64,000 nt of DNA from Phyllobates terribilis (Eukaryota). This document shows, piece after piece, positions 1-58,420 of this stretch. The position numbers were made by a program, and so were the translations under genes. Numbering within the stretch: position 1 is the stretch's first letter; each line of letters begins with the position of its first letter. The DNA is taken from the NCBI RefSeq assembly GCF_046119375.1, contig NW_027362762.1:654038001-654102000 (forward strand), in the 5' to 3' direction. Below the pieces are notes generated by a model. That model did no database searches. It was given only the letters and a program-made list of their open reading frames with translations, and had not been told where the DNA came from.

Positions 1-2343
1 CAAAGTCGTGCATTTGTGGAGCAATGCATGCTACACTTCAAGTTCTACCCTCTATGTTTTCCCACCGATCGGGTTAAGGTGGCATTCATTATGTCTTACC
101 TGGCGGGTGATGCCTTGGAATGGATCAACCCCCTATATGAAACACAGGATCCGATCCTTCTGGACCTAATGGCCTTCCTGGTGGCCTTTCTAATGGTCTT
201 CGATGATCCTAACCCGGAGGCTCCTGCTGAAGCTTCACCTCCCAATATCCCGGAGCAGCCCCGATGGGTAATGTGTGTGGGTAGCGCAATAGTCCTCCAG
301 CCCAATGAGACTACTGCCCACCCAGAATCCTCACAGGGTGACTACGCTTTCCGGAATACTTCTCCCAACCTCAAGAGGCAGTCCAGACGTGCTAGACGTA
401 GAGGCAAGCCGTCACGCCAGGGTCTGTCCTCCCTGAGACCTCCTGACCCCAACCTTGAAGTCCCTACTGAAGCTTCATCTCCCTGTATCCCGGAGAAGCC
501 CCAACGGGTAATGTGCGTGGGTAGTGCTCCGGTTCTCCTGCCCGAAGAGACTTCTGCCCATCCAGACTCCATACAGGAGAACTTCCTGCACCCGGCATCA
601 GATGCTTCACCCACTTTAACCGGTGTGCATGTCCAAGGATGCTCCAAAGCTGTGGTTACCTCTGAGTCTGTGCACCTCTACTACCTGGCGGAGGACCCCC
701 TGTTGCCTCCTGAATCCTCCGGGATACCACTCGATGACAAATGGAGAGAGACTTCTCTACACTCGGTACTCGATACTTTGTCCGCTTCGTCCTGTGAGCC
801 TGGCAATCGGTACCCCAAAGTGGTAGTTACCCCCGAGTCTCTACACCCCTCCGACCAGGCGGAGGACCTCCAGTTGTCTCCAGAACCCTTCGGGGTGCTA
901 CCTGGTAGCGAAAGGACAGAGACTCTCCTATACTCTGTACCTGATACCTCGCTCGCTTCGTCCAGTGAGTCCAACCTAGTGTACTCCGAAGCAGAGGTTA
1001 CTCCCGAGTCTCTACACCCCTCCGACCAGGCGGAGGACCTCCAGTTGTCTCCAGAACCCTTCGGGGTGCTACCTGGTAGCGAAAAAACAGAGACTCTCCT
1101 TTACTCTGTACCTGATACCTCGCTCGCTTCGTCCAGTGAGTCCAACCTAGTGTACTCCGAAGCAGAGGTTACTCCCGAGTCTCTACACCCCTCCGACCAG
1201 GCGGAGGACCTCCAGTTGTCTCCAGAACCCTTTGGGGTGCCACCTGGTGGTGAATGGACAGAGACTTTCCTATATCCTGGATCTGATACCTCGCTTGCTT
1301 CGTCCAGTGAGTCCGACCTTGTGTACTCTGAAGCAGAGGTTACCCTTGAGTCTCTACACCCCTTTGACCAGGCGGAGGACCTCCAGTTGTCTCCAGAACC
1401 CTTCGGGGTGCCACCTGGTGGTGAATGGACAGAGACTTTCCTATACTCGGTACCCGATACCTCGCCTGCTTCCTCCAGTGAGTCCGACCTAGTGTACTCT
1501 GAAGCAGATGTTTTCTCTGAGCCTCTGCACTCTTCTGACCCGGCGGAGGACCTCCAGTTGTTTCCTGAATTCTCCGGGGTACCACCAGATAACAAAGAGA
1601 CAGTGACTTTTCCTCATTATGTACCTGATAACCCGTCTATTTCTTCCTGTGAGCTTTACAAGATGTACCTCGAAGCAGAGATTACCCCCAAGTCTCTGTC
1701 CCCCTCCAACCCGGTGAAGGACTTCCAGTTGTCTCCTGTACCCTCTGGGGTGCCACCTGAAAATATGTGGAGAGAGACTTCCTTGTGTGCTGTTCCTGGT
1801 ACTCCACCCGTTTCGTCTGTTGCTAAGGATGGCTGGATAGGAGGTAGCATCCTAGCTAACCAGATGAGATCAATTTTTCCTGTGGACAGTGGAAGTGATC
1901 TCCTTGAAGTGAACTGGTCCTCGAATTCCCTGCGGAAGATTCTGGCAGGCCTGAAGAAGAGGGGGCGTAAGGGGGGGGGTACTGTAACATACCTGGCGGC
2001 GTCCTTGCATGGTGGTCCATCTCCCACTGTGCAAGAGCGCGCACTTGATCTCCAGTCCAGAATGTCTCTCTGGCTTCCCTCCTTGCTGTCTGTTTGTCTG
2101 TTTTGGCTGCATAGGGCGACGCCCGCTGAACTTCCTGTTTCTTGTACCTGCTGCGGACACGCCCCTGTTGCACCTTCAGCCTATTGCTGTCCATCTTTGG
2201 GTATTTATACCACCTTCTTCCTCAAGATGGCGCCTGAGCATTGTGTCCTGTCAGTCGGCTTTTTGTCTCTGACATGCCAGGTCCTATCCTGTTTTCCTGC
2301 CTGTTTTCCAGTTCTGTGTCTGAACTGTGGTCTGTTCTTGTGA
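1..2343 (+). CDS. Ty3/gypsy Gag-like (RTL/LDOC1/PEG10-type capsid domain) protein with Ser/Pro/Glu-rich repeats; open from the window start and running through the PPT into the LTR
   Basis: The N-terminus QSRAFVEQCMLHFKFYPLCFPTDRVKVAFIMSYLAGDALEWINPL...FLMVFDDP resembles the retrotransposon Gag capsid motif. It is followed by two copies of a unit with an 80-aa period (208 and 448) and seven 57-aa repeats. There are no protease, RT or integrase motifs. The part after 1983 is LTR read-through. Confidence 0.75.
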   Translation, partial: QSRAFVEQCMLHFKFYPLCFPTDRVKVAFIMSYLAGDALEWINPLYETQDPILLDLMAFLVAFLMVFDDPNPEAPAEASPPNIPEQPRWVMCVGSAIVLQPNETTAHPESSQGDYAFRNTSPNLKRQSRRARRRGKPSRQGLSSLRPPDPNLEVPTEASSPCIPEKPQRVMCVGSAPVLLPEETSAHPDSIQENFLHPASDASPTLTGVHVQGCSKAVVTSESVHLYYLAEDPLLPPESSGIPLDDKWRETSLHSVLDTLSASSCEPGNRYPKVVVTPESLHPSDQAEDLQLSPEPFGVLPGSERTETLLYSVPDTSLASSSESNLVYSEAEVTPESLHPSDQAEDLQLSPEPFGVLPGSEKTETLLYSVPDTSLASSSESNLVYSEAEVTPESLHPSDQAEDLQLSPEPFGVPPGGEWTETFLYPGSDTSLASSSESDLVYSEAEVTLESLHPFDQAEDLQLSPEPFGVPPGGEWTETFLYSVPDTSPASSSESDLVYSEADVFSEPLHSSDPAEDLQLFPEFSGVPPDNKETVTFPHYVPDNPSISSCELYKMYLEAEITPKSLSPSNPVKDFQLSPVPSGVPPENMWRETSLCAVPGTPPVSSVAKDGWIGGSILANQMRSIFPVDSGSDLLEVNWSSNSLRKILAGLKKRGRKGGGTVTYLAASLHGGPSPTVQERALDLQSRMSLWLPSLLSVCLFWLHRATPAELPVSCTCCGHAPVAPSAYCCPSLGIYTTFFLKMAPEHCVLSVGFLSLTCQVLSCFPACFPVLCLNCGLFL
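652..1830 (+). repeat. 171-bp (57-codon) in-frame coding tandem repeat, about 7 copies
   Basis: The equivalent codon recurs at 664, 835, 1006, 1177, 1348, 1519 and 1690 (period 171). The central copies are nearly identical and the outer ones are diverged. Confidence 0.95.
1955..1982 (+). other. Polypurine tract (PPT) of the LTR element
   Basis: AAGAAGAGGGGGCGTAAGGGGGGGGGTAC lies immediately before TGTAAC. The same GGGGGTAC|TG junction occurs on the minus strand of the two chromoviruses. Confidence 0.8.
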
Positions 2344-5269: not shown

Positions 5270-7811
5270 ATCCTTGCTGTAAGTTGTTTACTCTCATTGG
5301 ATCGTTGTGCTCCTTGTTGGTCCTTGCTGATTCTATTGTCACGCTGTAAACACCAGCAGTAGTCTGCCATCATGTTTGTGTTCCATCTGCCTTGATATAT
5401 ATGTTGTAGCATCGGCGTCTCTGCCTCCTGCCCCCTGCCCGGCAGAGACGCCGTCCCCCATGCCACCGCGGTCCTGCTCCAGCATCTTCTGGCCTCCCTG
5501 CAGCTGCTGCTGGTGCACGCAGCTTCTCTGGCCCTGTGCTTAGGGCGCGCGCATGCTCCCACCCTCTTAAAGGGGCCGCGTGCCGTCCCCCTATAAAAGG
5601 CACCTCCTCCAATATGGAGGCGTCCATGCAAGGTTGTAGCTTTGTGTGTGATACTCTGCTTCAGCCCTCAGGTCCCGCTGCTTGCCTGACTACCAGTCCA
5701 GCCTGCCAGCCAGACTACAAGTCTAGCCCGCCAGCCAGACTACAAGTCCAGTCCGCCAGCCAGACTACAAATCCAGTCCGCCATCCGGACTACTAGTCCA
5801 GTCCGTCTGCTTGTCTACTCTCCAGCCCGACAGTCTGCCTACTGCCAGTCCGCGAGTCTGTCTATGGGCTCTGCCCACCTGCTTACCTGAAAGCACCTGC
5901 CTGTTACCTGCCGTGCCTGCCAGCCAGCCTACCTGGAGGCTCCTGCCTGTTACCTGCTGTGCCAGCCAGCCTACCTGGAGGCTCCTGCCTGTTACCTGCC
6001 ATGCCTGCCAGCCCGCTTACCTAGAAGCACCTGCCTGTTACCTGCCATGCCTACCAGTCAGCCTACCTGGAGGCGCCTGCCTGTTACCTGCCTTGCCTGC
6101 CAGTCCGTCTGCCTGGATCACCCATCAGCCTGCCTGCCGTGCTCATCTGCTGTACCGGTTAGTCCCTGCCTTCTGACCCGTGGAAGTCACCTGCTCTCAT
6201 ACAAGGTCGGTCCCCAGAGTAGCACCTGGTCCCTCTGCTCGATTCCTCCCTGTTCACGGAGTCGATTGAGCCACCGTATGACCTTGGTTGGTCCAAGTTG
6301 ATACTCAGTTACGCCCCTCTGGTCCCTCCTTGCACCGCAGCACCCGGATCCGTAACATATGTTCCATAGTCCGATGTCTTCGTAAAAGCGTTCTCCTTGT
6401 TCTTCACTCATATCTCCAAGATTGGAAGGAAAGTAGTTCAGGTGGCTAAGAAGGAAATGCAATTTGACACTCATGTTTGCTCCCAGTCTTAGAAAAGCAA
6501 TCAACAAATTTTGAACTAAAAGGTTATAATTTTTGGCCTTAAAGTTGCCAAGAAATTCTGTAATCATGTCAGAAAAAGCAGACCAAGCATCCTTTCTTAT
6601 GTTTTTTTATGGTATTAAGGAATTTTAAGGAAGACTAATTTGTGGGGCATCAAATATGCCAGCTTTCAACTTTTCGTGTGAAAGAGAAGTAAGTTTGATA
6701 CAGATCACTCACCATCTCAATCCAAAAACCTAATGAACTGTTTCATCAGTCCCCATTTCATATGCAGTGGAGGAGCAACATTTTCTGAGGATTAACAAGT
6801 GGTTCATTCTTGATAATCTTTTCACCAATCGTAAATTTCTCTCTAGTTGGCCATTCTTTCCTTGTATAATGTTCTGCCTTTACGCGGCTATCCCAAAGGC
6901 ACAAATAGCAAGGACATTTTATGTATCCGCTTTGTTGTCCTAGAAGAATCAATATAACCTTCAGGTCACCACATAAAATCCAGCAATGATCATTATGTTT
7001 GATTTTTGGAGAATGGTTCTCAATACATTCATAAGTTTCTTTCATATTTACCAAATATAGAATGGAGGCTAGAATATTGCCATTGTGAAGCAATACACAC
7101 TTTAGACCTCTCTTTGAAATGGTAATTAAAAGCCTCCATTCTTCAGTTAGATAACTATCAAAACCCATTAACTCAATAAGTTCTTTGACGTCGATGCAAT
7201 ATGCAACCTCCTCATCCATATGGAAATATTTCAGTAGATCTTTCTCTCTGTTACGATGCATCAATATGTTACTGGGAGCTAGCAGGTTCTTTTCCTTTAG
7301 CCTTGAACCAAGTAACTCAGTTGGCAACTTAGGCAGATCAAGATCTCGTACTCAGCTTGAGTGAAAAGCTGGCACATTCTGGTATAAACTTATGAGGTCA
7401 TGAAATCTTCGTCATCTCATCTTGGAAAAATTGGGCTGACAGAATTCATCGTCATCAGGAATTTCCAAAGTAGTGTAGATAGGTACAGGATCTTTGTCAC
7501 AGTGAGCAACTGGTCTTAGAGCTGAGGTGAGATTTGGCAACTGGATGGAAGATTTTGATTTTGTGTTTATGGCTGTGATATTTATCATGCAAAAGTAGCA
7601 TTCATCAACACGGTTTTGAGGCTCTCGCCACACCATTGGAACTCTAAAGCGGAGACTTTTTCCCTTACCCTTGGTCCACTGTCTCAGGTTTTCAGCACAT
7701 TTTCTGCACACTTTATGTGATGTCCAAAGTTTTTCCTGGTCCCCATTTTTATTTCCAAAATATGTAACATAACATACATAACATAATAAGTGTTACACAC
7801 AAAGCCACATA
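5270..7811 (-). mobile_element. Decayed Chapaev3-like (CMC) DNA transposon; transposase split by a solo LTR and cut at the 5' end by a Tc1
   Basis: Fragments include VPMVWREPQNRVDECYFC, LCGDLKV...LLGQQSGYIKCPCYLCLWDSR and MSVKLHFLLSHLNYFPSNLGDMSEEQGERFYEDI. On the other side of the LTR is YQGRWNTNMMADYCWCLQRD. There are multiple frameshifts. The family assignment is from recalled motifs, and the termini were not identified. Confidence 0.75.
5405..6357 (+). mobile_element. Solo LTR (953 bp, family A)
   Basis: TGTAGC...GTAACA with a 5-bp TSD TATGT (5400-5404 and 6358-6362). It contains a TATA-like TATAAAAG and internal short repeats, and is similar to 53074-54167. Confidence 0.92.
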
Positions 7812-9429
7812 CAGTTAGGTCCATATATATTTGGACAGAGACAAAATTTTTCTAATTTTGGCTCTAGACATTACCACAATGAATTTTAAACAAAACAATT
7901 CAGATGCAGTTGAAGATCAGACTTTCAGCTTTCATTTGAGGGTATCCACATTAAAATTGGATGAAGGGTTTAGGAGTTTCAGCTCCTTAACATGTGCCAC
8001 CCTGTTTTTAAAAGGACCAAAAGTAATTGAACAATTGACTCCAAGGCTATTTCATGGACAGGTGTGGGCAATCCCTTTGTTATGTTATTCTCAATTAAGC
8101 AGATAATTGCATTTGGAACGTTTTGCTGTGAAGTAAACATGTGGTCAAAGGAGCTCTCCATGCAGGTGAAACAAGCCATCCTTAAGCTGCAAAAACAGAA
8201 AAAACCCATCCGAGAAATTGCTACAATATTAGAATTGGCAAAATCTACAGTTTGGTACATCCTGAGAAAGAAAGAAAGCACTGGTGAACTCATCAATGCA
8301 AAAAGACCTGGGCACCCACGGAAGACAACAGTGGTGGATGATCGCAGAATAATCTCCATGATGAAGAGAAACTGCTTCACAGCAGCCAACCAAGTGAACA
8401 ACACTCTCCAGAAGGTAGGCATATCAATATCCAAATCTACCATAAAGAGAAGACTGCATGAAAGTAAATACAGGGGGTTCACTGCACGGTGCAAGCCACT
8501 CATAAGCATCAAGAATAAAAAGGCTAGACTGGACTTTGCTAAAAAAAAATCTAAAAAAGCCAGCACAGTTCTGGAAGAACATTCTTTGGACAGATGAAAC
8601 CAAGATTAACCTCTACCAGAATGATGGAAAGAGAAAAGTATGGCGAAATCGTGGTACAGCTCATGATCCAAAGCATACCACATCATCTGTAAAACACGGC
8701 GGAGGCAGTGTGATGGCTTGGGCAGCATGGCTGCCAGTGGCACTGGGTCACTAGTGTTTATTGATGATGTGACACAGGACAGAAGCAGCCGAATGAATTC
8801 TGATGTATTCAGAGCCGTACTGTGTGCTCAGATCAAGCCAAATGCAGCCAAACTGATTGGTCGTCGTTTCATACTACAGATGGACAATGACCCAAAACAT
8901 AAAGCCAAAGCAACCCAGGAGTTTATTAAAGCCAAGAAGTGGAATATTCTTGAATGGCCAAGTCAGTCACCTGATCTCAACCCAATTGAGCATGCATTTC
9001 ACTTGTTAAAGACTAAACTTCAGACAGAAAGGCCCACAAACAAACAGCAACTGAAAACCACCGCAGTGAAGGCCTGGCAGAGCATCAAAAAGGAGGAAAC
9101 ACAGCGTCTGGTGATGTCCATGAGTTCAAGACTTCATGAAGTCATTGCCAACAAAGGGTTTTCAACCAAGTACTAGAAATGAACATTTTATTTACAATTA
9201 TTTAATCTGTCCAATAACTTTTGGTCCCTTTAAAAACAGGGTGGCACATGTTAAGGAGCTGAAACTCCTAAACCCTTCATCCAATTTTAATGTGGATACC
9301 CTCAAATGAAAGCTGAAAGTCTGAACTTCAACTGCACCTGAATTGTTTTGTTTAAAATTCATTGTGGTACTGTCTAGAACCAAAATTAGAAAAATGTAGT
9401 CTCTGTCCAAATATATATGGACCTAACTG
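7812..9429 (+). mobile_element. Full-length Tc1-family transposon (1618 bp) with long TIRs
   Basis: CAGTTAGGTCCATATATATTTGGACAG...CTGTCCAAATATATATGGACCTAACTG with about 220-bp inverted repeats and TA on both sides. Confidence 0.95.
8139..9176 (+). pseudogene. Tc1 transposase (DD34E type) with frameshifts
   Basis: HTH N-terminus, [27 protein letters not shown]. It is split over three frames near 8545 and 8725. Confidence 0.92.
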
Positions 9430-10303
9430 TATATATGTCCTTTGGGTGTTGTCAAAAAACACAAATATAACAACATACTGACCAGCAAAGGGGTAACAAT
9501 GTTTCAACTTTTGACTTTCAGGCTACATATCTCACCATACACTAGTGCTTCGAATGTGAGACTACTATCATTTTATAGACAATCATCTTGGCTAGCTCAT
9601 ACATACTACAAAATACAACCTGTTCTCACATTTCCTAATAGCTCAGTGTCTTATTAGGTTGATTCCCAAGCGAAAGGTCACTGGTTTGAATTGAGGAGCA
9701 GCCATGAAGAAGATTTCAGAAGAAAAGAGAAACAGCATCATCCAGCTCATCGATAGTGATCTCCCGGCCAAGAAAATTGCCAAACTGCATCATGTGAGTG
9801 CCATGACAGTTGGAATAATACTAAATGAAGTCCATCCATTCAAAAGCCAAGAAGGGGACGTCCAGGCAAAATATTGGAGTCAACAAGTTGGCTCATCACA
9901 AGGTCTATCAGTTCTGGCGCGAAAAACAAGGCAGTGGATGTAGCTCATAAGCTTTATAATAGTGAACACGTTACACAAGTCTAGAATGGTAGCCCGAAAA
10001 AAGCTGAAGAACCCTCATATTCAATATCGTGATAAGAAACGTTAGCTCGAGTTGCAAAAAAGTATGAAAAGTGGACAGTAGAAGATTGGAAACGAGAGAT
10101 TTGGAGCAATGAGACAAAAGTGAATAGACTAGGCTCTGACTAGGCTCTGAACAAGGAAAAAAGGGGCTAATAGATCAAGAAAATGAGGGAACTGCCAAAT
10201 TCAATGGAGGAAGCCTGATTATATGGGGTTGTTTCACTGCCAAAAGCATTGGATACTTGACCAAGATCAATGGTGATCTCAATGCTGAGCTATATGTGAG
10301 TAT

Positions 10304-10546
10304 TAGTGATGAGCGAACCTGCTCGGATAAGGGGTTATCTGAGCACGCTCAGGTCACAATTGAGTATCTTCGGCATGCTTGAAAAATAGGTTCAAGTCAC
10401 CGCAGCAGCATGTCTAGTGGCTGTTTGACAGCCGTAACGCATGCATGGATTGCCTGTTTGTTATTTTTCGAGCATGCCGAAGATACTCGGTTAGCACCCG
10501 AGCGTGCTCGGATAACCCGTTATCCGGGCATGTTCGCTCATCACTA
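10304..10546. mobile_element. hAT-type MITE (243 bp), largely palindromic
   Basis: TIR TAGTGATGAGCGAAC / GTTCGCTCATCACTA. 8-bp TSD GTGAGTAT / ATGAGTAT (7 of 8 match). It interrupts the Tc1 codons LYVSI|LQDEL. Confidence 0.9.
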
Positions 10547-10579
10547 ATGAGTATCCTACAAGATGAGTTATTTCATAGA

Positions 10580-10744: not shown

Positions 10745-13538
10745 CCATCCAGACCTGTAACATCCACCATCTCATTCACCCCCCCGACCTATCTATCAAC
10801 GTCAATGGCTGTTCATTCTCCCCAGTCCTGCAAGCTCGCTGCCTTGGGGTAACTTTGGAGTCTGATCTCCCTTTCAAACCACATATCCAAGCTCTTTCCA
10901 CTTCCTGCCAACTATAACTCAAAAACTCTGGATCTGCACATTCCTCAGCAAAGACTCTGCAAAACACTAGTGCACGCCCTCATTATCTCCCACCTTGATT
11001 ACTGCAACCTCCAGCACCGTCCCAATTTAGGGTCACCTTGCCGCTGGTGGGACGGCTTGTATACTTTTTTTGATCAAAAATAGTTCACTAAGTACCCTAT
11101 ATTTATTATGCAATTTTGCTTTACATTTATATATAATTATGGTAGGGTATGAGATATATTTTTGTCTTGCTTCTTTTTTGCTAGTGTGAACATGCCTCTG
11201 TTTCTTGTATGTCTGCCATCTTAGACCTCAGTTCACATTGTCTGGTTTTTTGACTTGTTTGCATTCTGTGCAATTTAAGGGTGTGGCATGCCCTTTGTGG
11301 AGCTGATTGGTATATATGTAGCTTACCACGGGCCTAGGTGGTCTGGAGTTGGGACCCGGTCCTATTTGTCTACCCTTTTATATGCATTACTTCAACTTTG
11401 ATATACAGTAAGGTTTTTAATATAGGCAGTATAGGTACCGTCCCAATTTAGGGTCACCTTGCCGCTGGTGGGACGGCTTGTATACTTTTTTTGATCAAAA
11501 ATAGTTCACTAAGTACCCTATATTTATTATGCAATTTTGCTTTACATTTATATATAATTATGGTAGGGTATGAGATATATTTTTGTCTTGCTTCTTTTTT
11601 GCTAGTGTGAACATGCCTCTGTTTCTTGTATGTCTGCCATCTTAGACCTCAGTTCACATTGTCTGGTTTTTTGACTTGTTTGCATTCTGTGCAATTTAAG
11701 GGTGTGGCATGCCCTTTGTTGAGCTGATTGGTATATATGTAGCTTACCACGGGCCTAGGTGGTCTGGAGTTGGGACCCGGTCCTATTTGTCTACCCTTTT
11801 ATATGCATTACTTCAACTTTGATATACAGTAAGGTTTTTAATATAGGCAGTATAGGTACCGTCCCAATTTAGGGTCACCTTGCCGCTGGTGGGACGGCTT
11901 GTATACTTTTTTTGATCAAAAATAGTTCACTAAGTACCCTATATTTATTATGCAATTTTGCTTTACATTTATATATAATTATGGTAGGGTATGAGATATA
12001 TTTTTGTCTTGCTTCTTTTTTGCTAGTGTGAACATGCCTCTGTTTCTTGTATGTCTGCCATCTTAGACCTCAGTTCACATTGTCTGGTTTTTTGACTTGT
12101 TTGCATTCTGTGCAATTTAAGGGTGTGGCATGCCCTTTGTTGAGCTGATTGGTATATATGTAGCTTACCACGGGCCTAGGTGGTCTGGAGTTGGGACCCG
12201 GTCCTATTTGTCTACCCTTTTATATGCATTACTTCAACTTTGATATACAGTAAGGTTTTTAATATAGGCAGTATAGGTACCGTCCCAATTTAGGGTCACC
12301 TTGCCGCTGGTGGGACGGCTTGTATACTTTTTTTGATCAAAAATAGTTCACTAAGTACCCTATATTTATTATGCAATTTTGCTTTACATTTATATATAAT
12401 TATGGTAGGGTATGAGATATATTTTTGTCTTGCTTCTTTTTTGCTAGTGTGAACATGCCTCTGTTTCTTGTATGTCTGCCATCTTAGACCTCAGTTCACA
12501 TTGTCTGGTTTTTTGACTTGTTTGCATTCTGTGCAATTTAAGGGTGTGGCATGCCCTTTGTTGAGCTGATTGGTATATATGTAGCTTACCACGGGCCTAG
12601 GTGGTCTGGAGTTGGGACCCGGTCCTATTTGTCTACCCTTTTATATGCATTACTTCAACTTTGATATACAGTAAGGTTTTTAATATAGGCAGTATAGGTA
12701 CCGTCCCAATTTAGGGTCACCTTGCCGCTGGTGGGACGGCTTGTATACTTTTTTTGATCAAAAATAGTTCACTAAGTACCCTATATTTATTATGCAATTT
12801 TGCTTTACATTTATATATAATTATGGTAGGGTATGAGATATATTTTTGTCTTGCTTCTTTTTTGCTAACCTCCAGCACTGTGGCTTCCTTTCCAACACTC
12901 TCACACCCCTCCAATCTATCCAAAACTCTGCTGCCCGACTAATCCACCTGTCACCCTGATATTCCCCGGCCTCTCTTCTCTGTCAATTCTTTCACTGGCT
13001 CCCCATTGCCCAGAGACTCCAGTTCCAAACCCTAACCATGGCATACAAAGCCATCTACAACCTGTCTCCTGCATACATCTGTGACCTAATCTCCCGATAC
13101 ATACCTGCATGCAACCTCTGATCCTCACAAGATCTCTTGCTGTACTCCCCTCTTATCTGCTCTTCCCACAATCGCATGCAAGATTTGTCCCGTGCATCCC
13201 CCCTACTCTGGAACTCTCTACCCTAACATATCAGACTCTCGCCTACCGTGGAAACCTTCAAATGGAACCTGAAGACCTGCTTCTTCTGACAAGCCTTCAA
13301 CCTGCAGTAACCCTTGCTTCACCATACCACTGCACGACCAGCTCTACCCTCACCTACTGTATCCTCACCCATCCCTTGTTGATTGTGAGCCCTCGCCGGC
13401 ATGGTCCTCGCTCCTCCTGTACCAGTCGCCATCATGTTTTGTTCAATATTATTGCAATTGTTTTTGTATGTATACCCCTTTTCACATGTAAAGCGCCATG
13501 TAATAAATGGTGCTATAACAATAAATAATTATAATAAT
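10745..13538 (+). mobile_element. 5'-truncated L2 LINE (RT C-terminus and 3' UTR) interrupted by the 421-bp array
   Basis: ARCLGVTLESDLPFKPHIQ...DYCN resumes after 12866. The 3' end GCGCCATG...AATAAATAATTATAATAAT is like the L2 3' end at 31349. Confidence 0.85.
11018..12866 (+). repeat. Tandem array of a 421-bp unit, 4.39 copies, near-identical, flanked by a 12-bp TSD
   Basis: Units start at 11018, 11439, 11860, 12281 and 12702. AACCTCCAGCAC occurs at 11006-11017 and 12867-12878. The only difference I noticed is TTTGTGGAG in copy 1 versus TTTGTTGAG. Confidence 0.97.
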
Positions 13539-14649
13539 CTGCACATGTTTTATTGTACCATCTGTGGCTGTTGTCCTCTTGACTGCTGAAAGTAAAAGTT
13601 AACCTGTTCCACCGTTAACCTGACTCCTGACTCTTCCGTATTCCTCCTCACTTATATCATGGGGAACGCCATCACCATCACATGGGGGAACAGTAAAAGC
13701 GATGTTAAACCTCCACACACACACACAGCTGTGTGCCCTTTATTACATTGTCTCTGGAGCGCTAGGCGCCGGGCACGGCCACCACCGGCCGTGTGGCAGA
13801 AAAAAAGGATTCGACATATGCCCTGTATGCTGGAGGGCTTCCCCCTGCGCTCTGAAAATTGCATATACTCAAGTGAATCAACCAGTATGCACCAACTTTG
13901 GGAACGTGTAGGAGAGACCTGGAATCAGATTTCGGTCGAGACATGCTTGAACCATGCCGAGAAGGATTAAGGAAGTGTTGGAAGCCAAAGTTAGATTTAC
14001 AATATACTAGCAAAATAATAAAATTAAAATTTAGATTCTTAGGAGCAAAACAGTAACAATGCAGTGACATGACAAGAATCTGCATAACCAGTCATATGCT
14101 AAATAGTTGCAAGTCAAATTTATGTATGAGATAGCCAAGATGCTTGTGTATAAAATGATGGGAGTCTCACGTTTGAAGCAGTTGTGGATGGTGAGATATT
14201 GAGCCTAAAAGTCAAAAGTTCAAAACATTGTTACCCTTTTGCTCATCAGTGTATATCAGGATTATTCCTGCTCTGTCCATGAACTGTTTGAGTGTTGGAT
14301 GACAACAAAAACATTTTTAACAGAGTTAAATTTGCTGCAACTTGTGAACCTCTTGAACGACTGAATGTTGCTAACGGTTTTCACGCTGCTTATATAGCTA
14401 TAAAATTCCAAAGTCGGCAGTTTTTAACTGCTTATTAAGCAGTCTTCCAATTACTTGTATCGATTGCATATTCAGCATTTCTTTTTGCATATTTAGCATA
14501 TCTAAATAACATAATTATAATTATATATAACGTTACATTATTACTGTAAGAGTTCTTAGTAAACAGTGTTTTATGGAAAAAACGGACATGACTGGAGGAA
14601 ATGGATGTGATTTTTGGATTCACCACACCAAAATTCATAAACATCACGT

Positions 14650-20458: not shown

Positions 20459-21663
20459 TAAAGAGCTGGCTGAGTGATAGAAAGCAGAGGGTGGTTATCA
20501 ATGGAGTAAGCTCAGGGTGTGTCAGGGTTACTAGCAGGGTGCCTCAAGGGTCTGTCTTGGGCCCTATATTATTTAATATATTTATTAATGATCTAGTGGA
20601 AGGGTTGCATAGTAAAATAGCAATATTTGCAGATGATACTAAACTTTGTAAAGTAGTTAATGCAGATGAGGATAGGGCACAGCTACAGGAGGATTTAGAT
20701 AAATTGGGGAGTTGGGCCAAAAAATGGCAAATGGGTTTCAATGCCGATAAATGTAAGGTCATGCACATGGGAAAGAAAAACAGCAGTCACCCATACATAT
20801 TAAATGGGAAACCGTTGGGGAAATCTGACATGGAGAAGGACCTGGGCGTCTTGGTTAACAGCAAATTAAATTGGAGTGCCCAGTGTCAGGCAGCAGCTGC
20901 GAAGGCAAATAGAGTCATGGCATGCATCAGAAGAGGAATAGGGGCACATGATGAGAACATTGTTCTTCCTCTGTATAAAGCGCTGGTAAGGCCGCACTTA
21001 GAATATTGTGCACAGTTCTGGGCTCCGGTGCTCAAGAAAGACATATTGGAGCTAGAGAGGGTACAAAGGAGGGCGACTAAGGTAATAAAGGGAATGGAGG
21101 GACTAGAATACCCAGAGAGGTTGTCAAAATTAGGCCTATTTACGTTGGAAAAGAGAAGGCTTAGGGGAGACCTCATAAACATGTATAAATACATCAGGGG
21201 GCAGTACAGAGATCTCTCCCATGACCTGTTTATACCAAAGATGGTGACAAAGATAAGGGGACACACTATGTGTCTGGAGGAAAGGAGGTTCCTGCACCAG
21301 CATAGAAGGGGATTCGTTACGGTCAGAGCCGTGAGACTCTGGAACTCTCTGGGAGAGGAAGTGGTGATGTCCAACTCACTTAATGAGTTCAAGAGAGGCC
21401 TGGACGCCTTTCTTGAGAACAATAAAATTACATCTTATGCTTAGTGATAGTTAATTAATCCAGGGATTTAATCTGACTGCCAGATTGGAGTCGGGAAGTG
21501 AATTTTTCCTCAATGATGTAAATTGGCCTATACCGCATGGGGTTTTTTTGCCTTCCCCTGGATCAACGCTGCGGAATAGCTGCAGTGCACAAGAAATAGG
21601 CTGAACTGGATGGACGCTTGTCTTTTTTCGGCCTTTTAAACTATGTAACTATGTAACTATGTA
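20459..21663 (+). mobile_element. Young 5'-truncated CR1 LINE
   Basis: An uninterrupted RT frame, followed by a 3' UTR ending in (ACTATGTA)x3. Confidence 0.92.
20491..21444 (+). CDS. CR1 ORF2 reverse transcriptase, C-terminal 317 aa (5'-truncated, no native start)
   Basis: [52 protein letters not shown]. Confidence 0.9.
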   Translation: MVINGVSSGCVRVTSRVPQGSVLGPILFNIFINDLVEGLHSKIAIFADDTKLCKVVNADEDRAQLQEDLDKLGSWAKKWQMGFNADKCKVMHMGKKNSSHPYILNGKPLGKSDMEKDLGVLVNSKLNWSAQCQAAAAKANRVMACIRRGIGAHDENIVLPLYKALVRPHLEYCAQFWAPVLKKDILELERVQRRATKVIKGMEGLEYPERLSKLGLFTLEKRRLRGDLINMYKYIRGQYRDLSHDLFIPKMVTKIRGHTMCLEERRFLHQHRRGFVTVRAVRLWNSLGEEVVMSNSLNEFKRGLDAFLENNKITSYA

Positions 21664-23894: not shown

Positions 23895-24512
23895 CAGACC
23901 TGGCCAAAGTGCGGCCTGCGGGCCATTTCCAGCCCTCTGGCTGTCCCAGCCCAGCCCATGGATCAAAACAGCCGAATTGCTGAAAACAGTGGCCCACAGG
24001 CCGCAGCATGCAGCCGCCCTCCCCTGACCGATGTCCTGATGTCACCATTATCTTCATCCTCAGGATGAAGATAGAGGTGAATACAATGGTGGAAGAGGGA
24101 GCCACCAGCCCCTTCTTCCACCATTCAGCGTAAGCGACTGAGACAGCAGACGCTATGACATCACTACATCACGTCTGCTGCGCAGAACATCAGTGCACAC
24201 AGCAAAGAACAGAGCGCTGGGGGAACGGGTGCGAAGTGAGTATGCCCTTTTCTATAAATATGTATGAATGTGTGTGTGATGTGTGTTTGCATATAGGAGG
24301 CTATGTTAAGGCTCATACTGTACATAGGGTGGCTATGTGGGGGCTCATACTGTGCATAAGGGGCAATGTGGGGGCATATACTGTATGTAGGGGGCTATGT
24401 GGGGCTCATACTGTAAATGGAGGCTATATGAAGGCTCATACTGTATAGAGGTGGACTATGTGGGGTTTCATACTGTATATAGGGGTGTCTGCATTGTGTG
24501 ATATTGTATATA
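23895..24512 (+). mobile_element. Left part of a non-autonomous hAT-like element; its minisatellite resumes at 55004
   Basis: Begins CAGACCTGGCCAAAGTGCGGCCTGCGGGCC (hAT-like terminus) and runs into GGGGCTCATACTGTATATA repeats cut at a TA by the Tc1 at 24513. No right terminus was found. Confidence 0.55.
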
Positions 24513-30627: not shown

Positions 30628-33600
30628 ACAATGACCCAAAACACAATTCCAAAAGCACTATAAAATGGTTTGAGAGAAAGCACTGGAGACTTCTAAGGTG
30701 GCCAGCAATGAGTCCAGACCTGAATCCCATAGAACACCTGTGGAGAGATCTCAAAATGGCAGTTTGGAGAAGGCACCCTTCAAATATCAGGGACCTGGAG
30801 CAGTTTGCCAAAGAAGAATGGTCTACAATTCCAGCAGAGCATTGTAAGATACTCATTGATGGTTACCGGAAGTGGTTGTTCACAGTTATTTTGGCTAAAG
30901 GTTGTGCAACCAAGTATTATGCTGAGGGTGCCAATACTTTTGTCTGGCCCATTTTTGGAGTTTTGTGTGAAATGATCCATAATTTGATTTTTGCTTCATT
31001 CTCTTTTGTGTTTTTTCCTTGCAAGCAAATTAAATGAAGATAATAATACCAAAGAATTTGTGATTGCAATCATTTTCAGGAAGAAACTGGGTATTATCTG
31101 ACACAATTGCAGGGGTGCCAATACTTTTGACTACCACTGTACACTATATAAAAAGACACATATGCATGTTTTACTCAATATCTGACATGTAATCAGAATA
31201 AACCTTTCCCATTTTTAGGTCCATTAGGATTATCATAATTTTTAATATTTGCCAAATGCCAGAATAATGAGAGAGAGAGAGAGAATGTTTTAATGCACTT
31301 TTATTACTTACTGCAAAGTCAAAAGTTTACATACATCAAGATTACTATTATTATTATTAATTTTTATAGCGCCATTGATTCCATGGCGCTGTACATAAGA
31401 AGAGGTTACATACCAAATACAGATATCACTTACAGTAAACAAACTAACAATGATCGAACGGTCTTGCGGGCTTACATTCTACAGGAATGGGGGATGAGAA
31501 CAGTAGGTTGAAGGGTTGCAGTAGCTCCGGTGTTGTTAAGGTGGCAGCAAGCAAGGTCATGGCAGGCTGTAAGATTGTTTGAAGAGATGGGTTTTCAGGT
31601 TCCGTCTGAAAGATCCAGGTGTGGTGGATAATCGGACATGTTGAGGCACAGAATTCCATAGGACGGGGGATATTAGGGAGAAAACTTGGAGGCGATTGCG
31701 TGAGGAACGAATAAGTGTGGAGGAGAGAAGGAGGTCTTGGGAGGACCACAGGTTACGTGAGGGAATATATTGGGAGATTAGTTCAGAGATGTATGGAGGA
31801 GAAAGGTTATGGATGGCTTTGTAGGTCAGTGTTAGTAGTTTGAACTGGATACGCTGGGGAAATGAGAGCCAGTGAAGGGATTTGCAAAGGGGGGTAGCAG
31901 AGGAGTAGCGAGGTGAGAGATGAACAAGTTGTGCAGCAGAGTTGAGGATGGACTGGAGGGGTGCAAGAGTGTTAGCAGGTAGGCCACAGAGGAGGATGTT
32001 GCAGTAGCCAAGGCGGGAGATGATGAGGGCATGCACAAGCAGTTTAGTAGATTGAGGGTTGAGGAAAGGAGGGATTCTGGAAATATTTTTGAGCTGGAGG
32101 CGACAGGAGGTGGCGAGAGCTTGGATGTGGGGTTTGAAGGTCAGTGCAGAGTCAAGGGTTACTCCAAGGCAGCGGATTGTTGGTAGAGTGGAAAGGGTGA
32201 TGTCATTTATTGTGATAGAAAGATCAGGTGGAAAAGATATGCGAGATGGGGGAAAGATAATGAGTTCAGTTTTGTCCACATTGAGCTTGAGGTAGCGAAA
32301 GGAGAAGGAGTATAAGGCTGCTAGACATGCTGGGATTCTGGAGAGCAGAGATGTGAGAGGTAGATCTGGGTGTCATCAGCGTACATATGGTACTGGAAGC
32401 CATGGGATTTTATGAGCTGTCCCAGGCCAAGGGTATAGATTGAGAAGAGTAAGGGTCCTAGGACAGAGCCTTGAGGGACTCCAACAGAGAGGGGGCGGGG
32501 TGAGGAGGTAGTGTGGGAGTGGGAGATGCTAAATGTGCAGTTAGAACGGTATGAGGAGATCCAAGATAGGGCAAGGTCTTTGATGCCAAAGGAAGAGAGC
32601 ATCTGTAGTAGGAGGCAGTGGTCAAATGTCTCGAAAGAAGAGGACAGGTCAAGAAGAAAAAGTACAGAGAATTGTCTGTTAGCTTTGGCTGTAAGTCATT
32701 GGTGATTTTGGTAAGGGCAGTTTCGGTGGAATGGTGGGGGCGGAAGCCAGATTGTCGGTTGTCGAAGAGAGAGTTAGATGAAAAGTGGGGGGAAAATTCA
32801 GTGTGAACGTGTTGCTCAAGGAGTTTGGAGGCAAATGGGAGCAGCGATATGGGGTGATAGCTGGACAAGGCAGTTTGGTCGAGGGATGGCTTTTTGAAGA
32901 TGGGCGTGATTGTGGCATGTTTGAAGGCAGCCGGGAAAGTACCAGAAGATAGTGATAGGTTGAAGAGATAGGTTAGGGATGGGATGAGTGTGGGAGTGAG
33001 GTTGGGGAGGAGGTGAGATGGGATGGGGTCGAGTGCACATGTTGTGAGGTGTGATTTGGAGAGGAGACGAGTAAGGTCTCTTTCCGTGATGTTGGGAAGA
33101 GAGGTTATGGGGGTAGGGAAATGATGTGGAAAACAAAGGGGTTGTGGTAGTCGGAGAGTAAAGACTTGCCGTGTTTGGTCAATCTTATTTTTGAAGCGTG
33201 TGGCAAACTCCTCAGCAGAGATGACGGAGATCGAAGGTGGCAGTGGAGGGCGGAAGAGAGAGTTAAAAGTGTTGAATAGCTGTTTGGGGTTGTAGGATAG
33301 GGAGAATATGAGGGTTATGAAGTAGGCTTGTTTAGCAGAGGTGAGTTATGATTTGAATGCGAGTGTTGCTTGTTTGAATGCAGTGAAGTCATCTTGAGTA
33401 TGTGTTTTCTTCCAACGCCGCTGTTATGATCTGCAACAAGTACTAAGGAAAGAAAGGGGAAAGCTATCCCTACAATAAGACTAAGCTGAATCCCTACGAT
33501 GTGGCGGGCTGCCTGTTCCTTGCAAACAGACCCGCCTTAGTCCTCGGCTAGTCTGAACGAAGACCTATAGCATAAAGGAAGGGGTCCCTAAAAGAACTAA

Positions 33601-38324: not shown

Positions 38325-39695
38325 TTCTATTAGTCCATCTATACTGACCTCCATCAGGTTGCAAATTGAATATAATTTTTTTTCTGCATCTAGCTCTGAA
38401 AAAATATTGGGCTTCTAGATGTGTGTGGGACTTGTTGTATTAGTCCATCTATACTGACCTCCATGAGGTTGCAAACTGCATATATTTTTTTCTTCATCTA
38501 CCTCTGAAAAAATATTGGGCTTCTAGCTGTGTGTGGGACTTGTTCTATTAATCCATCTATACAGACCTCCATCAGGTTGCAAACTGAATATATTTTTTTC
38601 TGCATCTACCTCTGAAAAAATATTGGGCTTCTAGCTGTGTGTGGGACTTGTTGTATTAGTCCATCTATATTGACCTCCATCAGGTTGCAAATTGAATATA
38701 ATTTTTTTCTGCATCTAGCTCTGAAAAAATATTGGGCTTCTAGCTGTGTGTGGGACTTGTTGTATTAGTCCATCTATACTGACCTCCATCAGGTTGCAAA
38801 CTGCATATATTTTTTTCTTCATCTACCTCTGAAAAAATATTGGGCTTCTAGCTGTGTGTGGGACTTGTTCTATTAATCCATCTATACAGACCTCCATCAG
38901 GTTGCAAACTGAATATATTTTTTTCTGCATCTACCTCTGAAAAAATATTGGGCTTCTAGCTGTGTGTGGGACTTGTTGTATTAGTCCATCTATACTGACC
39001 TCCATCAGGTTGCAAACTGAATATATTTTTTTCTGCATCTACCTCTGAAAAAATAGTGGGCTTCTAGCTGTGTGTGGGACTTGTTGTATTAGTCCATCTA
39101 TACTGACCTCCATCAGGTTGCAAACTGAATATATTTTTTTCTGCATCTACCTCTGAAAAAATATTGGGCTTCTAGCTGTGTGTGGGACTTGTTCTATTAA
39201 TCCATCTATACAGACCTCCATCAGGTTGCAAACTGAATATATTTTTTTCTGCATCTACCTCTGAAAAAATATTGGGCTTCTAGCTGTGTGTGGGACTTGT
39301 TGTATTAGTCCATCTATACTGACCTCCATCAGGTTGCAAACTGAATATATTTTTTTCTGCATCTACCTCTGAAAAAATATTGGGCTTCTAGCTGTGTGTG
39401 GGACTTGTTCTATTAATCCATCTATACAGACCTCCATCAGGTTGCAAACTGAATATATTATTTTCTGCATCTACCTCTGAAAAAATATTTGGCCTTCTAG
39501 CAGTGTGTGGGACTTTCTCTATTAGTCCATCTATACTGACCTCCATCAGGTTGCAAATTAAAAATAATTTTTATCTGCATCTAGCTCTGAAAAAATATTT
39601 GGCCTTCTAGCAGTGTGTGGGACTTTCTCTATTAGTCCATCTATACTGACCTCCATCAGGTTGCAAATTGAATATAATTTTTTTCTGCATCTAAC
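38325..39695 (+). repeat. 108-110-bp satellite, about 12.6 copies, inside the hAT 5' region
   Basis: Units at 38331, 38441, 38549, 38657, 38766, 38874, 38982, 39090, 39198, 39306, 39414, 39523 and 39633. Confidence 0.97.
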
Positions 39696-39809
39696 CCAGC
39701 CAATAGTTTTGGCCTAATACCACAGTTTGGCCACTCAGCTCTGCTCGGTTCCCATCCATTGTTTTTTTGTGCAAACAACTCCAGAGTTGTTAATTAGTTA
39801 ACCACCAAA

Positions 39810-42800: not shown

Positions 42801-43512
42801 ACACATGAGTGCCTTCTTGCTGCACTACCTGCAACATGACCCTCGAATTGTGAGAATTAGAAATAATCCTGACTACTGGGTTGCCACACTGTTAGATCCC
42901 CGGTACAAAAGTAAATTTGCAGAAATTATTCCTGCCATAGAAAGGGATGCACACATGCAGGAGTATCAGCAGAGACTGTTGCAGAATCTTACATGTGCTT
43001 TTCCACAAAATACCAGTGGTGCACGTAGTGAATCTCACAGTTCCAACTTGCCAACCGTGGGACCGTCAAGTGTTCAGCACTCAAACCGTAACAGAACCAC
43101 AGTATCTGCTGGTAACATCAATTTTGCGGAATCATTTCACCACTTTTTTAGCCCATCCTTTGCAAGGCCACAGGAGACAAGAAGTCTGACACATAGTCAA
43201 CGCCTAGAGACGATGGTACAGGAGTATCTCCAAGTAAACATTGAAGCCACGACTGTGTCACTGGACCCTTGCTCTTTTTGGGCTTCCAATCTGGATAAAT
43301 GGCCGGAGCTAGCCACTTACGCCTTGGAGATCTTGTCATGCCCCGCAGCCAGCGTTCTGTCTGAACGTGTGTTCAGCGCTGCTGGTGGTGTGCTGACAGA
43401 TAAGCGCACGCGGCTCTCCACTGATAATGTAGACAGACTCACGTTCATAAAGATGAACAAATCATGGATCCGAAACGACTTTTCTACCCCTGTGTCATCC
43501 TGGGGAGAGTAA
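39810..43512 (+). pseudogene. hAT transposase (BED finger, DDE core, dimerisation domain), about 1230 codons, disrupted by stops and frameshifts
   Basis: BED: AWAFF...CNICQQKLSRG...MNRHMDMKH. Core: HFTTDTWTS, CDNAANL, HVPCMAHVLNLVVQ, CDVPTR. C-terminus: LSCPAASVLSERVFSAAGGVLTDKRTRLSTDNVDRLTFIKMN. Confidence 0.93.
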
Positions 43513-43554
43513 AAGCTTGATGATTGGTTAAAATCACCCTACCAACCGTTTTAA

Positions 43555-43820
43555 GCTTTCAAATTACTAATCATGTTTATCTGTATCTTGGCTAGAAAAT
43601 AATTTGGGCTTTGTAGCAGTGTGCAGCACTGATTCTATTAGGCCATCTATAATAAGCTCCACCAGATTTAAAATTACTAATCATGTTTATCTGTATCTTG
43701 ACTGGAAAATAATTTGGGCTTTGTAGCAGTGTGCAGCACTGATCCTATTAGGCCATCTATACTAAAGCTTCACCAGATTTAAAATTAATAATAATTTTTA
43801 GCTGCATCTAGCCCGGAAAA
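43555..43820 (+). repeat. About 110-bp repeat x2.5, related to the 5' satellite, downstream of the transposase
   Basis: AAATTA(C/A)TA recurs at 43561, 43671 and 43782. The CTATTAGGCCATCTATA...CCACCAGATT core resembles the 5' satellite unit. Confidence 0.8.
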
Positions 43821-43949
43821 TAATTTTGGGGCTCCGAGATGCGCAAGACACATAAGTGCCTTCTTGCTGCACTACCTGCAGCATGACCCTCATTTTGTCA
43901 GAATTCGAAGTAATCATGACTACTGGGTTGCCACACTCTTAGATCCCCC

Positions 43950-58038: not shown

Positions 58039-58288
58039 TAAAGGCATAATAGAGTTTGTGTGGCTTCAAAGGAATACAACTAAGGGAAGAAATTAAATGG
58101 CTTAGCAGTAATATCAAGAACGATTATAAAAATTGCCATCATGCAATTTAGTAACAAAAGATAGCTAATGGGTGATCTAATAGTTAGGTCTCTGCTGTCT
58201 CTGTGACTGTTCATTCAATTCTGGCAGCACAGGATGAATGTTCAAACCAAAAACAGGTGCTCGTTGCTTCATAGTGGAGCCAATCATT

Positions 58289-58420
58289 TAAATACACCTT
58301 CCCACCTGTTTGTTTTCCCTCAATCTCCACTTCCCTCTTCTTTGGTTGACAACTCTGGCTTCATAAAACTAAAGAAGGGCAGATATAGAGGGAAGAAAAG
58401 CAGGTAGGAAGGTGTATTTA
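58289..58420. mobile_element. Small MITE (132 bp)
   Basis: TIR TAAATACACCTTCCCACCTG / CAGGTAGGAAGGTGTATTTA. A related copy lies at the end of the window. Confidence 0.7.

What the first reader, a model, noticed from the sequence alone, without database searches (positions are those of the whole stretch)
11006..12878. Young 421-bp x4.4 head-to-tail array inserted as one event with a 12-bp TSD (retrozyme-like)
Seen: the L2 reading ...TACTGC AACCTCCAGCAC TGTGGC... is split, with AACCTCCAGCAC duplicated on both sides of 4.39 almost identical non-coding units. There are no TIRs, LTR termini or poly(A), and no similarity to the flanks. Known: long TSDs typify target-primed reverse transcription; non-LTR retrozymes and Penelope pseudo-LTRs occur as tandem monomers of a few hundred nt. 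Inference: a non-integer multimer with a TSD fits rolling-circle reverse transcription of a small circular RNA, i.e. a possibly undescribed non-autonomous mobile RNA family. This is the strongest candidate for a new system in the window.
Basis: partly seen in the sequence, partly recalled or inferred. Interest (0 to 1): 0.85.

Follow-up and report, generated by a model that had tools for sequence, protein, structure and literature searches.

The report
Young tandem-repeat insertion in frog LINE
A block of 4.4 nearly identical copies of a 421-base non-coding unit was dropped very recently, apparently in one event, into an old LINE remnant of a frog genome; it behaves like the small circular-RNA retroelements ('retrozymes') already known from amphibians but lacks their hallmark ribozyme, and from this one locus its mobility cannot be proven.

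Summary
Window 11018-12866 is 4 full 421-bp units plus 165 bp, with one mismatch in 1849 bp. It is flanked by an exact 12-bp direct repeat (11006-11017 and 12867-12878). A diverged L2 paralogue in the same window (32174-31346, minus strand) runs straight through the site with one copy of the 12-mer, so this is a true target-site duplication.

The insert has no ORF over 64 codons, no inverted or LTR-type termini and no poly(A). It has no similarity to anything else in the window. The host is an anuran, probably a dendrobatid.

The defining retrozyme feature was tested and not met: Rfam found no hammerhead or other self-cleaving ribozyme, even at E<=10. The + strand RNA folds better than shuffles (z -3.2) and has a 41-pair, G-U-rich long-range helix.

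No other copy could be found. The collections on hand hold no frog genome DNA, so dispersal, empty alleles and links to Penelope-like elements remain untested.

Best reading (about 0.45): one target-primed reverse-transcription event copied a 421-nt RNA several times round. This is retrozyme-like or non-autonomous-Penelope-like, but without a hammerhead. Rivals are a linear multimeric transcript, circular-DNA capture, and in-place expansion.

The parts
11006..11017 (.). Left copy of the 12-bp target-site duplication (AACCTCCAGCAC)
   Evidence: Exact repeat of 12867-12878. Aligns to the single-copy site of the paralogous L2.
11018..12866 (+). The insert: 4 full 421-bp units (11018, 11439, 11860 and 12281 are the unit starts) plus a 165-bp partial unit (12702-12866). 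It is non-coding, 38% G+C and T-rich on the + strand. Taking + as the RNA strand is an inference from folding only.
   Evidence: TRF. One mismatch in 1849 bp. No ORF over 64 codons. No Rfam family. No tRNA. No terminal inverted repeats or poly(A). CpG observed/expected 0.32.
12867..12878 (.). Right copy of the 12-bp target-site duplication
11439..11486 (+). 5' arm of the predicted long-range RNA helix (unit positions 1-48), shown for unit 2; the same in every full unit
   Evidence: Circular and linear MFE folds. 41 pairs with the arm at 11730-11779, mean pair probability 0.95.
11730..11779 (+). 3' arm of the predicted long-range RNA helix (unit positions 292-341), shown for unit 2
   Evidence: 18 G-C, 13 A-U and 10 G-U pairs. 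Only 3 of 200 shuffles give a helix this long. The minus strand has no equivalent (longest helix 12 pairs).
10837..13536 (+). Host: 5'-truncated, decayed L2-type LINE ORF2 C-terminal remnant, interrupted by the insert. Besides that one insertion, the frame has at least two in-frame stops in the 141 codons read next to the site.
   Evidence: Collinear with the paralogue at about 70% identity. Translations. Paralogue ORF hits anuran RT-domain proteins.
31346..32174 (-). Paralogous L2 copy that serves as an 'empty-site' proxy; the single-copy equivalent of the 12-mer is at 31989-32000
   Evidence: blastn, alignment A1.

Best explanation
This is one recent retrotransposition-type event. An endonuclease made nicks 12 bp apart in an old L2 remnant. 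The freed 3' end primed reverse transcription of a 421-nt non-coding RNA, most likely the + strand. The polymerase copied the unit about 4.4 times before the cDNA was joined to the other side.

The simplest way to get that product is to run round a circularised monomer. Jumping end to end between identical monomers would give the same result. Filling the staggered gap gave the 12-bp duplication.

In behaviour this matches animal non-LTR retrozymes, that is, non-autonomous riders of Penelope-like elements, which are common in amphibians. This unit, however, carries no recognisable hammerhead. How a monomer would be cut out and closed is therefore unknown.

Shown: the array, its near-identity, the true duplication, and the absence of coding capacity, terminal repeats, poly(A) and known ribozymes.
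Inferred: the RNA intermediate, the circle, the + strand, and the Penelope-like or LINE enzyme donor.
For: - A real 12-bp duplication at a site that is single-copy in a paralogue. This is close to the 8-10 bp reported for Penelope-like insertions (PMC3846280) and fits the 'larger than 4 bp' reported for animal retrozymes (PMC7229834).
- A non-integer multimer with arbitrary end points and 1-2 bp microhomology at both junctions.
- One mismatch in 1849 bp. All units therefore derive from one template at almost one moment. At 1-3e-9 substitutions per site per year (rate quoted in PMC12822217), this is of the order of 0.2-0.5 million years, with wide error.
- No inverted repeats, LTR ends, poly(A) or ORF.
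- Unit size, low G+C and copy number fit published vertebrate retrozymes: mean 316 bp in amphibians, and 75% of families have at most 7 units.
- Strand-specific predicted RNA structure: z -3.2 as a circle on the + strand against -1.75 on the - strand. The helix has 41 pairs, of which 10 are G-U.
- The host is an anuran, probably a dendrobatid. Anurans carry Penelope-like elements. Hammerhead-less Penelope clades, and non-autonomous elements giving multicopy head-to-tail insertions, are on record (PMC8557442).
Against: - No hammerhead or any other self-cleaving ribozyme family was found in the unit, read across unit junctions, on either strand, at E<=10.
- No second copy was seen anywhere that could be searched, so a mobile family is not demonstrated.
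- There is no Penelope-type 30-40 bp 'tail' or inverted 5' copy at the ends.
- There is no Penelope ORF in the window related to the unit.
- The fold statistics are modest (3 of 200 shuffles reach the helix length) and cannot be checked by covariation.
- Nothing in a single locus tells a cDNA from a DNA fragment.
Confidence: 0.45

Rival explanations
1. RNA-mediated, but with no circle. A linear multimeric read-through transcript of a homogeneous tandem array elsewhere in the genome was reverse-transcribed at the nick by a LINE or Penelope-like enzyme and 5'-truncated, giving 4.4 units.
For: It gives the same duplication, the same microhomologies and the same lack of poly(A) as the best explanation. 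No ribozyme is needed, which fits the negative Rfam result. Tandem multimers of such units are common in amphibian genomes.
Against: It needs a source array whose units are identical to within one base in 1849. No source array is visible in the window. No LINE-like 3' tail that a stringent L2 or CR1 enzyme would recognise shows up as similarity to the LINE copies in the window.
Confidence: 0.2
2. DNA-mediated. An extrachromosomal circular DNA, or its rolling-circle product, carrying the 421-bp repeat was captured by end joining at a break with 12-nt staggered ends. Fill-in of the overhangs produced the duplication.
For: There is 1-2 bp microhomology at both junctions and near-identity of units. 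Spread of short satellite arrays into euchromatin through circular DNA has been proposed in insects (PMC11610590, listed; title and abstract only). CpG depletion of the unit (0.32, against 0.42 for the window) shows long residence as methylated nuclear DNA.
Against: End-joining capture usually leaves small deletions or no duplication, rather than a clean 12-bp duplication (established knowledge, not tested here). The G-U-rich, strand-specific helix suggests selection at the RNA level. CpG depletion is equally expected for a resident retroelement family.
Confidence: 0.15
3. A smaller insertion that grew in place. About 1.4 units (a 165-bp direct terminal repeat around 256 bp, like a Penelope-type partial tandem with pseudo-LTRs) inserted with the duplication, and two or three unequal exchanges then raised it to 4.4 units.
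For: Partial tandems are the usual Penelope insertion product (PMC8557442). A model of local expansion after insertion is proposed for vertebrate retrozymes. The fractional part (0.39 unit) would be preserved by unequal exchange.
Against: It needs several successive events within the time in which only one substitution arose in 1849 bp and none in the duplication. A single-step origin is more economical.
Confidence: 0.1
4. Not a mobile element at all. Either the copy number or the whole block is an assembly artefact, or the block is a nuclear copy of tandem repeats from the mitochondrial control region or other foreign DNA.
For: Near-perfect tandem repeats are a known source of assembly error (PMC9977147). 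The unit has no relatives in the window. Frog mitochondrial control regions can hold tandem repeats (own knowledge, untested).
Against: A clean 12-bp duplication at a site verified by a paralogue is not what a misassembly or contaminant join produces. Only the number of units could be wrong. CpG depletion like that of the nuclear surroundings. Mitochondrial inserts normally lack such duplications (own knowledge).
Confidence: 0.07

Closest known systems
Animal non-LTR retrozymes (Cervera and de la Pena 2020, PMC7229834; Li, Clavereau and Pollet 2026 preprint, 10.64898/2026.07.22.740005)
   Same: Head-to-tail units of a few hundred bp (amphibian mean 316 bp; most families have at most 7 units). 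Non-coding, G+C below 50%, with no LTR, PBS or PPT. The duplication is longer than 4 bp. They are found in all seven amphibians sampled.
   Different: Retrozymes are defined and detected by a type I hammerhead in at least two consecutive units, and none is detectable here. Circular RNA, genome-wide dispersal and kinship to a Penelope pseudo-LTR are unknown for this unit.
Penelope-like elements and their non-autonomous derivatives (pseudo-LTR partial tandems; Chlamys non-autonomous elements such as MRC1 with multicopy head-to-tail insertions; Naiad clade without canonical hammerhead; PMC8557442, PMC3846280)
   Same: The insertion product is a partial or multiple tandem. Duplications are around 8-10 bp, and microhomology at the 5' junction is on record. 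Some clades lack hammerheads. Non-autonomous members insert as head-to-tail multimers.
   Different: No RT or GIY-YIG ORF, no 30-40 bp tail and no inverted 5' copy. The hammerhead-less clades have so far been reported from invertebrates, fish, algae and protists, not from frogs. No partner element has been identified.
Amphibian hammerhead satellites (newt satellite 2 type repeats, as reviewed in PMC7229834)
   Same: Amphibian tandem repeats of about 330 bp that are transcribed and occur in dispersed clusters.
   Different: They carry a hammerhead and occur in very high copy number. Here there is no hammerhead and the copy number is unknown.
Euchromatic spread of satellite DNA through circular DNA intermediates (for example Tribolium, PMC11610590)
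   Same: Short arrays of identical units appear at new euchromatic sites.
   Different: This is a DNA-level model, and a clean long target duplication is not its expected signature. I read only the title and abstract.
SINEs and LINE-mobilised retrocopies
   Same: Non-coding, inserted with a duplication of LINE-like length.
   Different: No Pol III-type head (no tRNA, 5S or 7SL match), no LINE-derived tail, no poly(A) or microsatellite end, and the insert is a multimer.

Membership tests
Non-LTR (animal) retrozyme | Tandem head-to-tail non-coding units of about 50-970 bp | tested here: met
   421 bp x 4.39. Longest stop-free frame 64 codons.
Non-LTR (animal) retrozyme | Complete type I hammerhead ribozyme in at least two consecutive units (criterion of 10.64898/2026.07.22.740005) | tested here: not met
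   Rfam 15 covariance models (all hammerhead types, HDV-like, twister, hairpin, pistol, hatchet and others) gave no hit at E<=10 on 2.9 kb or on 701 bases spanning a unit junction. A crude core-motif regex (motif from memory) found nothing foldable.
Non-LTR (animal) retrozyme | Low G+C (<50%), and a target duplication longer than 4 bp when present | tested here: met
   38% G+C. 12-bp duplication.
Non-LTR (animal) retrozyme | Expressed as linear and circular RNA of unit length | not testable with these tools
   No transcript data are available. Only a predicted + strand structure exists.
Non-LTR (animal) retrozyme | Many dispersed copies (monomers, dimers, multimers) in the genome; sequence kinship to a Penelope pseudo-LTR | not testable with these tools
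   No other copy in the window. The searchable collections lack frog genomes. Frog genome DNA could not be fetched.
Autonomous Penelope-like element | ORF with RT and GIY-YIG endonuclease | tested here: not met
   No ORF over 64 codons in the insert.
Penelope-like insertion signature (autonomous or not) | Partial or multiple tandem giving direct terminal repeats, with a short variable duplication | tested here: met
   The first and last 165 bp of the insert are direct repeats by construction of the 4.39-mer. 12-bp duplication.
Penelope-like insertion signature (autonomous or not) | 30-40 bp 'tail' and/or an inverted 5'-truncated copy (often present, not obligatory) | tested here: not met
   The insert abuts the duplication on both sides with no extra bases and no inverted copy.
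LTR retrotransposon / TRIM | TG...CA terminal repeats and a 4-6 bp duplication (PBS and PPT not searched for here) | tested here: not met
   The ends read CGTCCC...TTTGCT, and the duplication is 12 bp.
Cut-and-paste DNA transposon / MITE | Terminal inverted repeats and a family-typical duplication (2-11 bp) | tested here: not met
   Terminal inverted-repeat score is no better than shuffles: 467 of 500 shuffles score at least as high.
Helitron / rolling-circle DNA transposon | Insertion without a target duplication, with fixed 5' and 3' termini | tested here: not met
   A 12-bp duplication is present and the ends are arbitrary points of the unit.
SINE | Pol III-gene-derived head and a LINE-related or A-rich tail | tested here: not met
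   No tRNA. No 5S, 7SL or tRNA Rfam hit. No tail similarity to the LINE copies in the window.

The most novel reading that the evidence does not exclude
The 421-nt unit is a currently or very recently active small circular-RNA retroelement of poison frogs. It either has no self-cleaving ribozyme at all, so that host enzymes cut and close it, or it carries a ribozyme of a class not yet described, perhaps built around the G-U-rich 41-pair helix. It multiplies by rolling-circle reverse transcription using a Penelope-like or LINE enzyme.
Probability: 0.15. Interest if true: 0.7.

Novelty: new variant of a known kind. Interest (0 to 1): 0.45.

Why it matters
Animal retrozymes are found today only by looking for hammerheads inside tandem repeats. 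A multimer insertion that has every other trait of the class, a clean long duplication and almost no age, but no hammerhead, would mean one of two things. Either the search criterion misses part of the class, or multimeric retroposition does not need a ribozyme.

An insertion this young is also a rare 'snapshot' of the product before decay. Both junctions, their microhomologies and the phase of the unit at each end can be read directly, which constrains models of how such tandems are made.

If the unit turns out to be an ordinary member of a catalogued frog repeat family, or a fragment of a Penelope pseudo-LTR, the finding is routine annotation.

Tried and rejected
1. Known RNA families. Rfam was run at the gathering threshold on the window, at E<=10 on the array and on a junction-spanning piece, and at E<=5 on the whole window. 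No ribozyme turned up anywhere, so there is also no positive control for frog hammerheads in this window.
2. tRNA-derived head: none.
3. Other copies in the window: blastn with word size 7 and nhmmer --max with the array masked found none.
4. Other copies elsewhere. Exact 23-24-mers in JGI metagenomes (two scans), prokaryotic genomes and IMG/VR gave 0 hits. A six-string search of paper full texts gave 0 hits.
5. Protein-space proxies for DNA search. The 64-codon frame gave no candidate. The exact 37-aa ATG ORF is not in the collection. The exact flanking ORFs of 135 and 139 aa are not on record.
Empty-allele and dispersal tests were therefore impossible.
7. Inverted or LTR-type termini and poly(A): absent.
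8. A match between the 12-mer target and a similar stretch inside the unit (minus strand) was considered as a possible homology-guided join. I rejected it: by my rough estimate it is at chance level, and it does not lie at the junctions.
9. Replitrons and other HUH transposons with variable duplications were rejected. They are known from algae and plants, have fixed termini and do not form multimers.
10. Whether the 130-bp inverted pair at 9477-9605 and 14121-14250 marks a larger transposon carrying the locus: no termini or duplication were evident, and I did not pursue it.

I stopped doing so. No conclusion rests on either; the ribozyme verdict rests.
Full report
**What is there.** Tandem Repeats Finder reports one array at 11016-12867 with period 421, 4.4 copies, 99% matches and no indels. 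Read in register from 11018, it is four complete units plus 165 bp, 1849 bp in all, and it holds a single mismatch, in unit 1. The 12-mer AACCTCCAGCAC stands directly before the array (11006-11017) and directly after it (12867-12878). The junctions carry 2 bp of microhomology on the left (AC) and 1 bp on the right (A), so the insert could be counted as up to 1852 bp.

**Is the 12-mer a target duplication?** Yes. The flanks belong to a 5'-truncated, decayed L2-type LINE ORF2 C-terminus. The translations read ...LDYCNLQH on the left and NLQHCGF...LQSIQNSAARL... on the right, in one frame. A second copy, about 30% diverged, lies at 32174-31346 on the minus strand and is collinear with both flanks. 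In alignment A1 both 12-mers fall on the same twelve columns of that paralogue, between the conserved TACTGC and TGTGGC.

Two controls back this up. None of the other eleven tandem arrays in the window has such a flanking repeat. Only 11 of 20000 random pairs of 55-bp segments taken about 1.85 kb apart share a 12-mer.

I compared the two flanks separately with the paralogue.

**What the insert is not.**
- It has no ORF: at most 39 aa inside the units, and the longest stop-free frame is 64 codons.
- It has no terminal inverted repeats, no TG...CA ends and no poly(A) or microsatellite tail.
- It has no tRNA-like part.
- It has no similarity to the flanks or to any other part of the 64 kb, by blastn or by nhmmer.
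- It matches no Rfam family. That includes every hammerhead type and the other self-cleaving ribozymes, on either strand, across unit junctions, at E<=10.
- No hammerhead exists anywhere in the window, so I had no in-genome positive control.

**What the unit looks like.**
- Composition: 38% G+C and T-rich on the + strand.
- CpG observed/expected is 0.32, against 0.42 for the window. This is the composition of DNA that has long lived in a methylated vertebrate germ line, not of a newcomer.
- The + strand RNA folds better than dinucleotide shuffles: z -2.8 when linear and z -3.2 as a circle with 65% of bases paired.
- The minus strand does not fold notably well (z about -1.75).
- The + strand fold is dominated by an interrupted 41-pair helix between unit positions 1-48 and 292-341. 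It has 10 G-U pairs and a mean pair probability of 0.95.
- Only 3 of 200 shuffles produce a helix that long, and the minus strand reaches only 12 pairs.
- This is a modest hint of an RNA stage on the + strand. Without relatives, covariation cannot be tested.

**Host.** The paralogue's 239-aa ORF finds anuran LINE RT-domain proteins. The closest come from Dendrobates tinctorius (69%), Ranitomeya imitator (84% over part) and Phyllobates terribilis (74% over part). The window is therefore frog DNA, probably from a poison frog.

The rest of the window is a dense mosaic of Tc1, hAT, Ty3/Gypsy, CR1 and other LINE pieces. Anuran genomes, dendrobatids included, have been annotated for Penelope-like elements (PMC12822217).

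**Looking for relatives.**
- Exact-word scans of JGI metagenomes, prokaryotic genomes and IMG/VR found nothing.
- Protein-space proxies found nothing.
- Exact look-ups of the flanking ORFs found nothing.
- DNA of the large frog assemblies could not be fetched.
- The key predictions of mobility therefore stay untested: dispersed copies with their own duplications, and an empty allele.
- These negative results say nothing about the frog genome itself.

**Mechanism.** The anatomy has five features: a non-integer multimer of one template, arbitrary end points, a clean 12-bp duplication, small junction microhomologies and no poly(A). It is best explained by target-primed reverse transcription of a 421-nt RNA copied several times over.

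This is what is described for two known groups:
- Animal non-LTR retrozymes: units of 170-400 nt and more, low G+C, duplications longer than 4 bp, present in all seven sampled amphibians, mostly 7 units or fewer (PMC7229834; preprint 10.64898/2026.07.22.740005).
- Penelope-like elements: these insert as partial tandems with duplications of about 8-10 bp (PMC3846280; PMC8557442).

Hammerhead-less Penelope clades, and non-autonomous Penelope-type elements that insert as head-to-tail multimers, are also on record, though not from frogs.

One mismatch in 1849 bp puts the event at roughly 0.2-0.5 million years, using 1-3e-9 substitutions per site per year (rate quoted). The error on this is large.

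I put about 0.45 on this reading. Within it, the circle, the + strand and the enzyme donor are inferences.

**Rivals.**
- A linear multimeric transcript of a very homogeneous source array (0.2).
- Capture of circular or rolling-circle-amplified DNA at a staggered break (0.15).
- A 1.4-unit partial-tandem insertion later expanded by unequal exchange (0.1).
- An assembly artefact in copy number, or a mitochondrial or foreign insert (0.07).

None can be excluded from one locus. The clean duplication argues against the last one and weakly against DNA capture. The near-zero divergence argues against stepwise growth in place.

**Comparison and novelty.** It works like a non-LTR retrozyme or a non-autonomous Penelope rider. 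It is not a retrozyme by the published definition, because the hammerhead criterion was tested and not met. I therefore file it as a possible new variant of a known kind, at moderate interest.

It becomes routine if the unit matches a catalogued repeat or a Penelope pseudo-LTR. It becomes notable if a dispersed, hammerhead-less, circular-RNA family is shown.

The file used for the searches is unit 2 of the array as it stands.

Noticed in passing
window 7809-9432: Tc1/mariner-type element with 225-bp terminal inverted repeats that are 96% alike. The transposase frame (HTH_Tnp_Tc3_2 + DDE_3) is interrupted at least once, giving two ORFs. The high similarity of the two repeats suggests it is fairly young.
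   Followed up: partly
window 9477-9605 and 14121-14250: A 130-bp pair in inverted orientation (86% identical) brackets the L2 remnant and the array. No termini or flanking duplication were evident, so these may be two copies of a short repeat rather than the ends of one element.
   Followed up: partly
window 10302-10548: A roughly 250-bp self-complementary (foldback) stretch, 75% complementary, just upstream of the L2 remnant.
   Followed up: no
window 38325-43826: hAT-type ORFs (39810-43512, with a hAT dimerisation domain) lie between a 108-bp x12.6 array (38325-39693, 94% matches) and a related 110-bp x2.4 array (43557-43826). By eye, the two TRF unit sequences share motifs in the same orientation. 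This looks like a hAT element with subterminal tandem arrays.
   Followed up: no
window 47499-47618 (minus strand): A 120-nt match to eukaryotic SSU rRNA (63.8 bits, above the gathering score; model positions 28-600, so with a large gap). It is an rRNA-derived fragment among retroelement pieces.
   Followed up: no
window 16-2343: A 775-codon open frame containing a 171-bp x6.5 tandem array (642-1759, 82% matches) and a weak gag-like DUF4939 hit. Possibly a repeat-expanded retroelement gag-type gene.
   Followed up: no
window 24291-24485 and 55049-55817: The same family of roughly 31-bp minisatellite (CATACTGTATATAGGGG-type units) occurs at two distant places in the window.
   Followed up: no
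window 58281-58427: A long hairpin gives weak, sub-threshold hits to several microRNA precursor models on both strands (best E 0.011). It is probably an inverted-repeat element rather than a microRNA gene.
   Followed up: no
window 20491-21441; 50767-51723 (minus); 26.1-29.4 kb, 36.2-37.5 kb, 48.1-49.0 kb (minus): A CR1-type LINE RT C-terminus, a LINE APE endonuclease piece and three Ty3/Gypsy pol fragments. No GIY-YIG or Penelope-type ORF was seen among the 20 ORFs scanned.
   Followed up: partly
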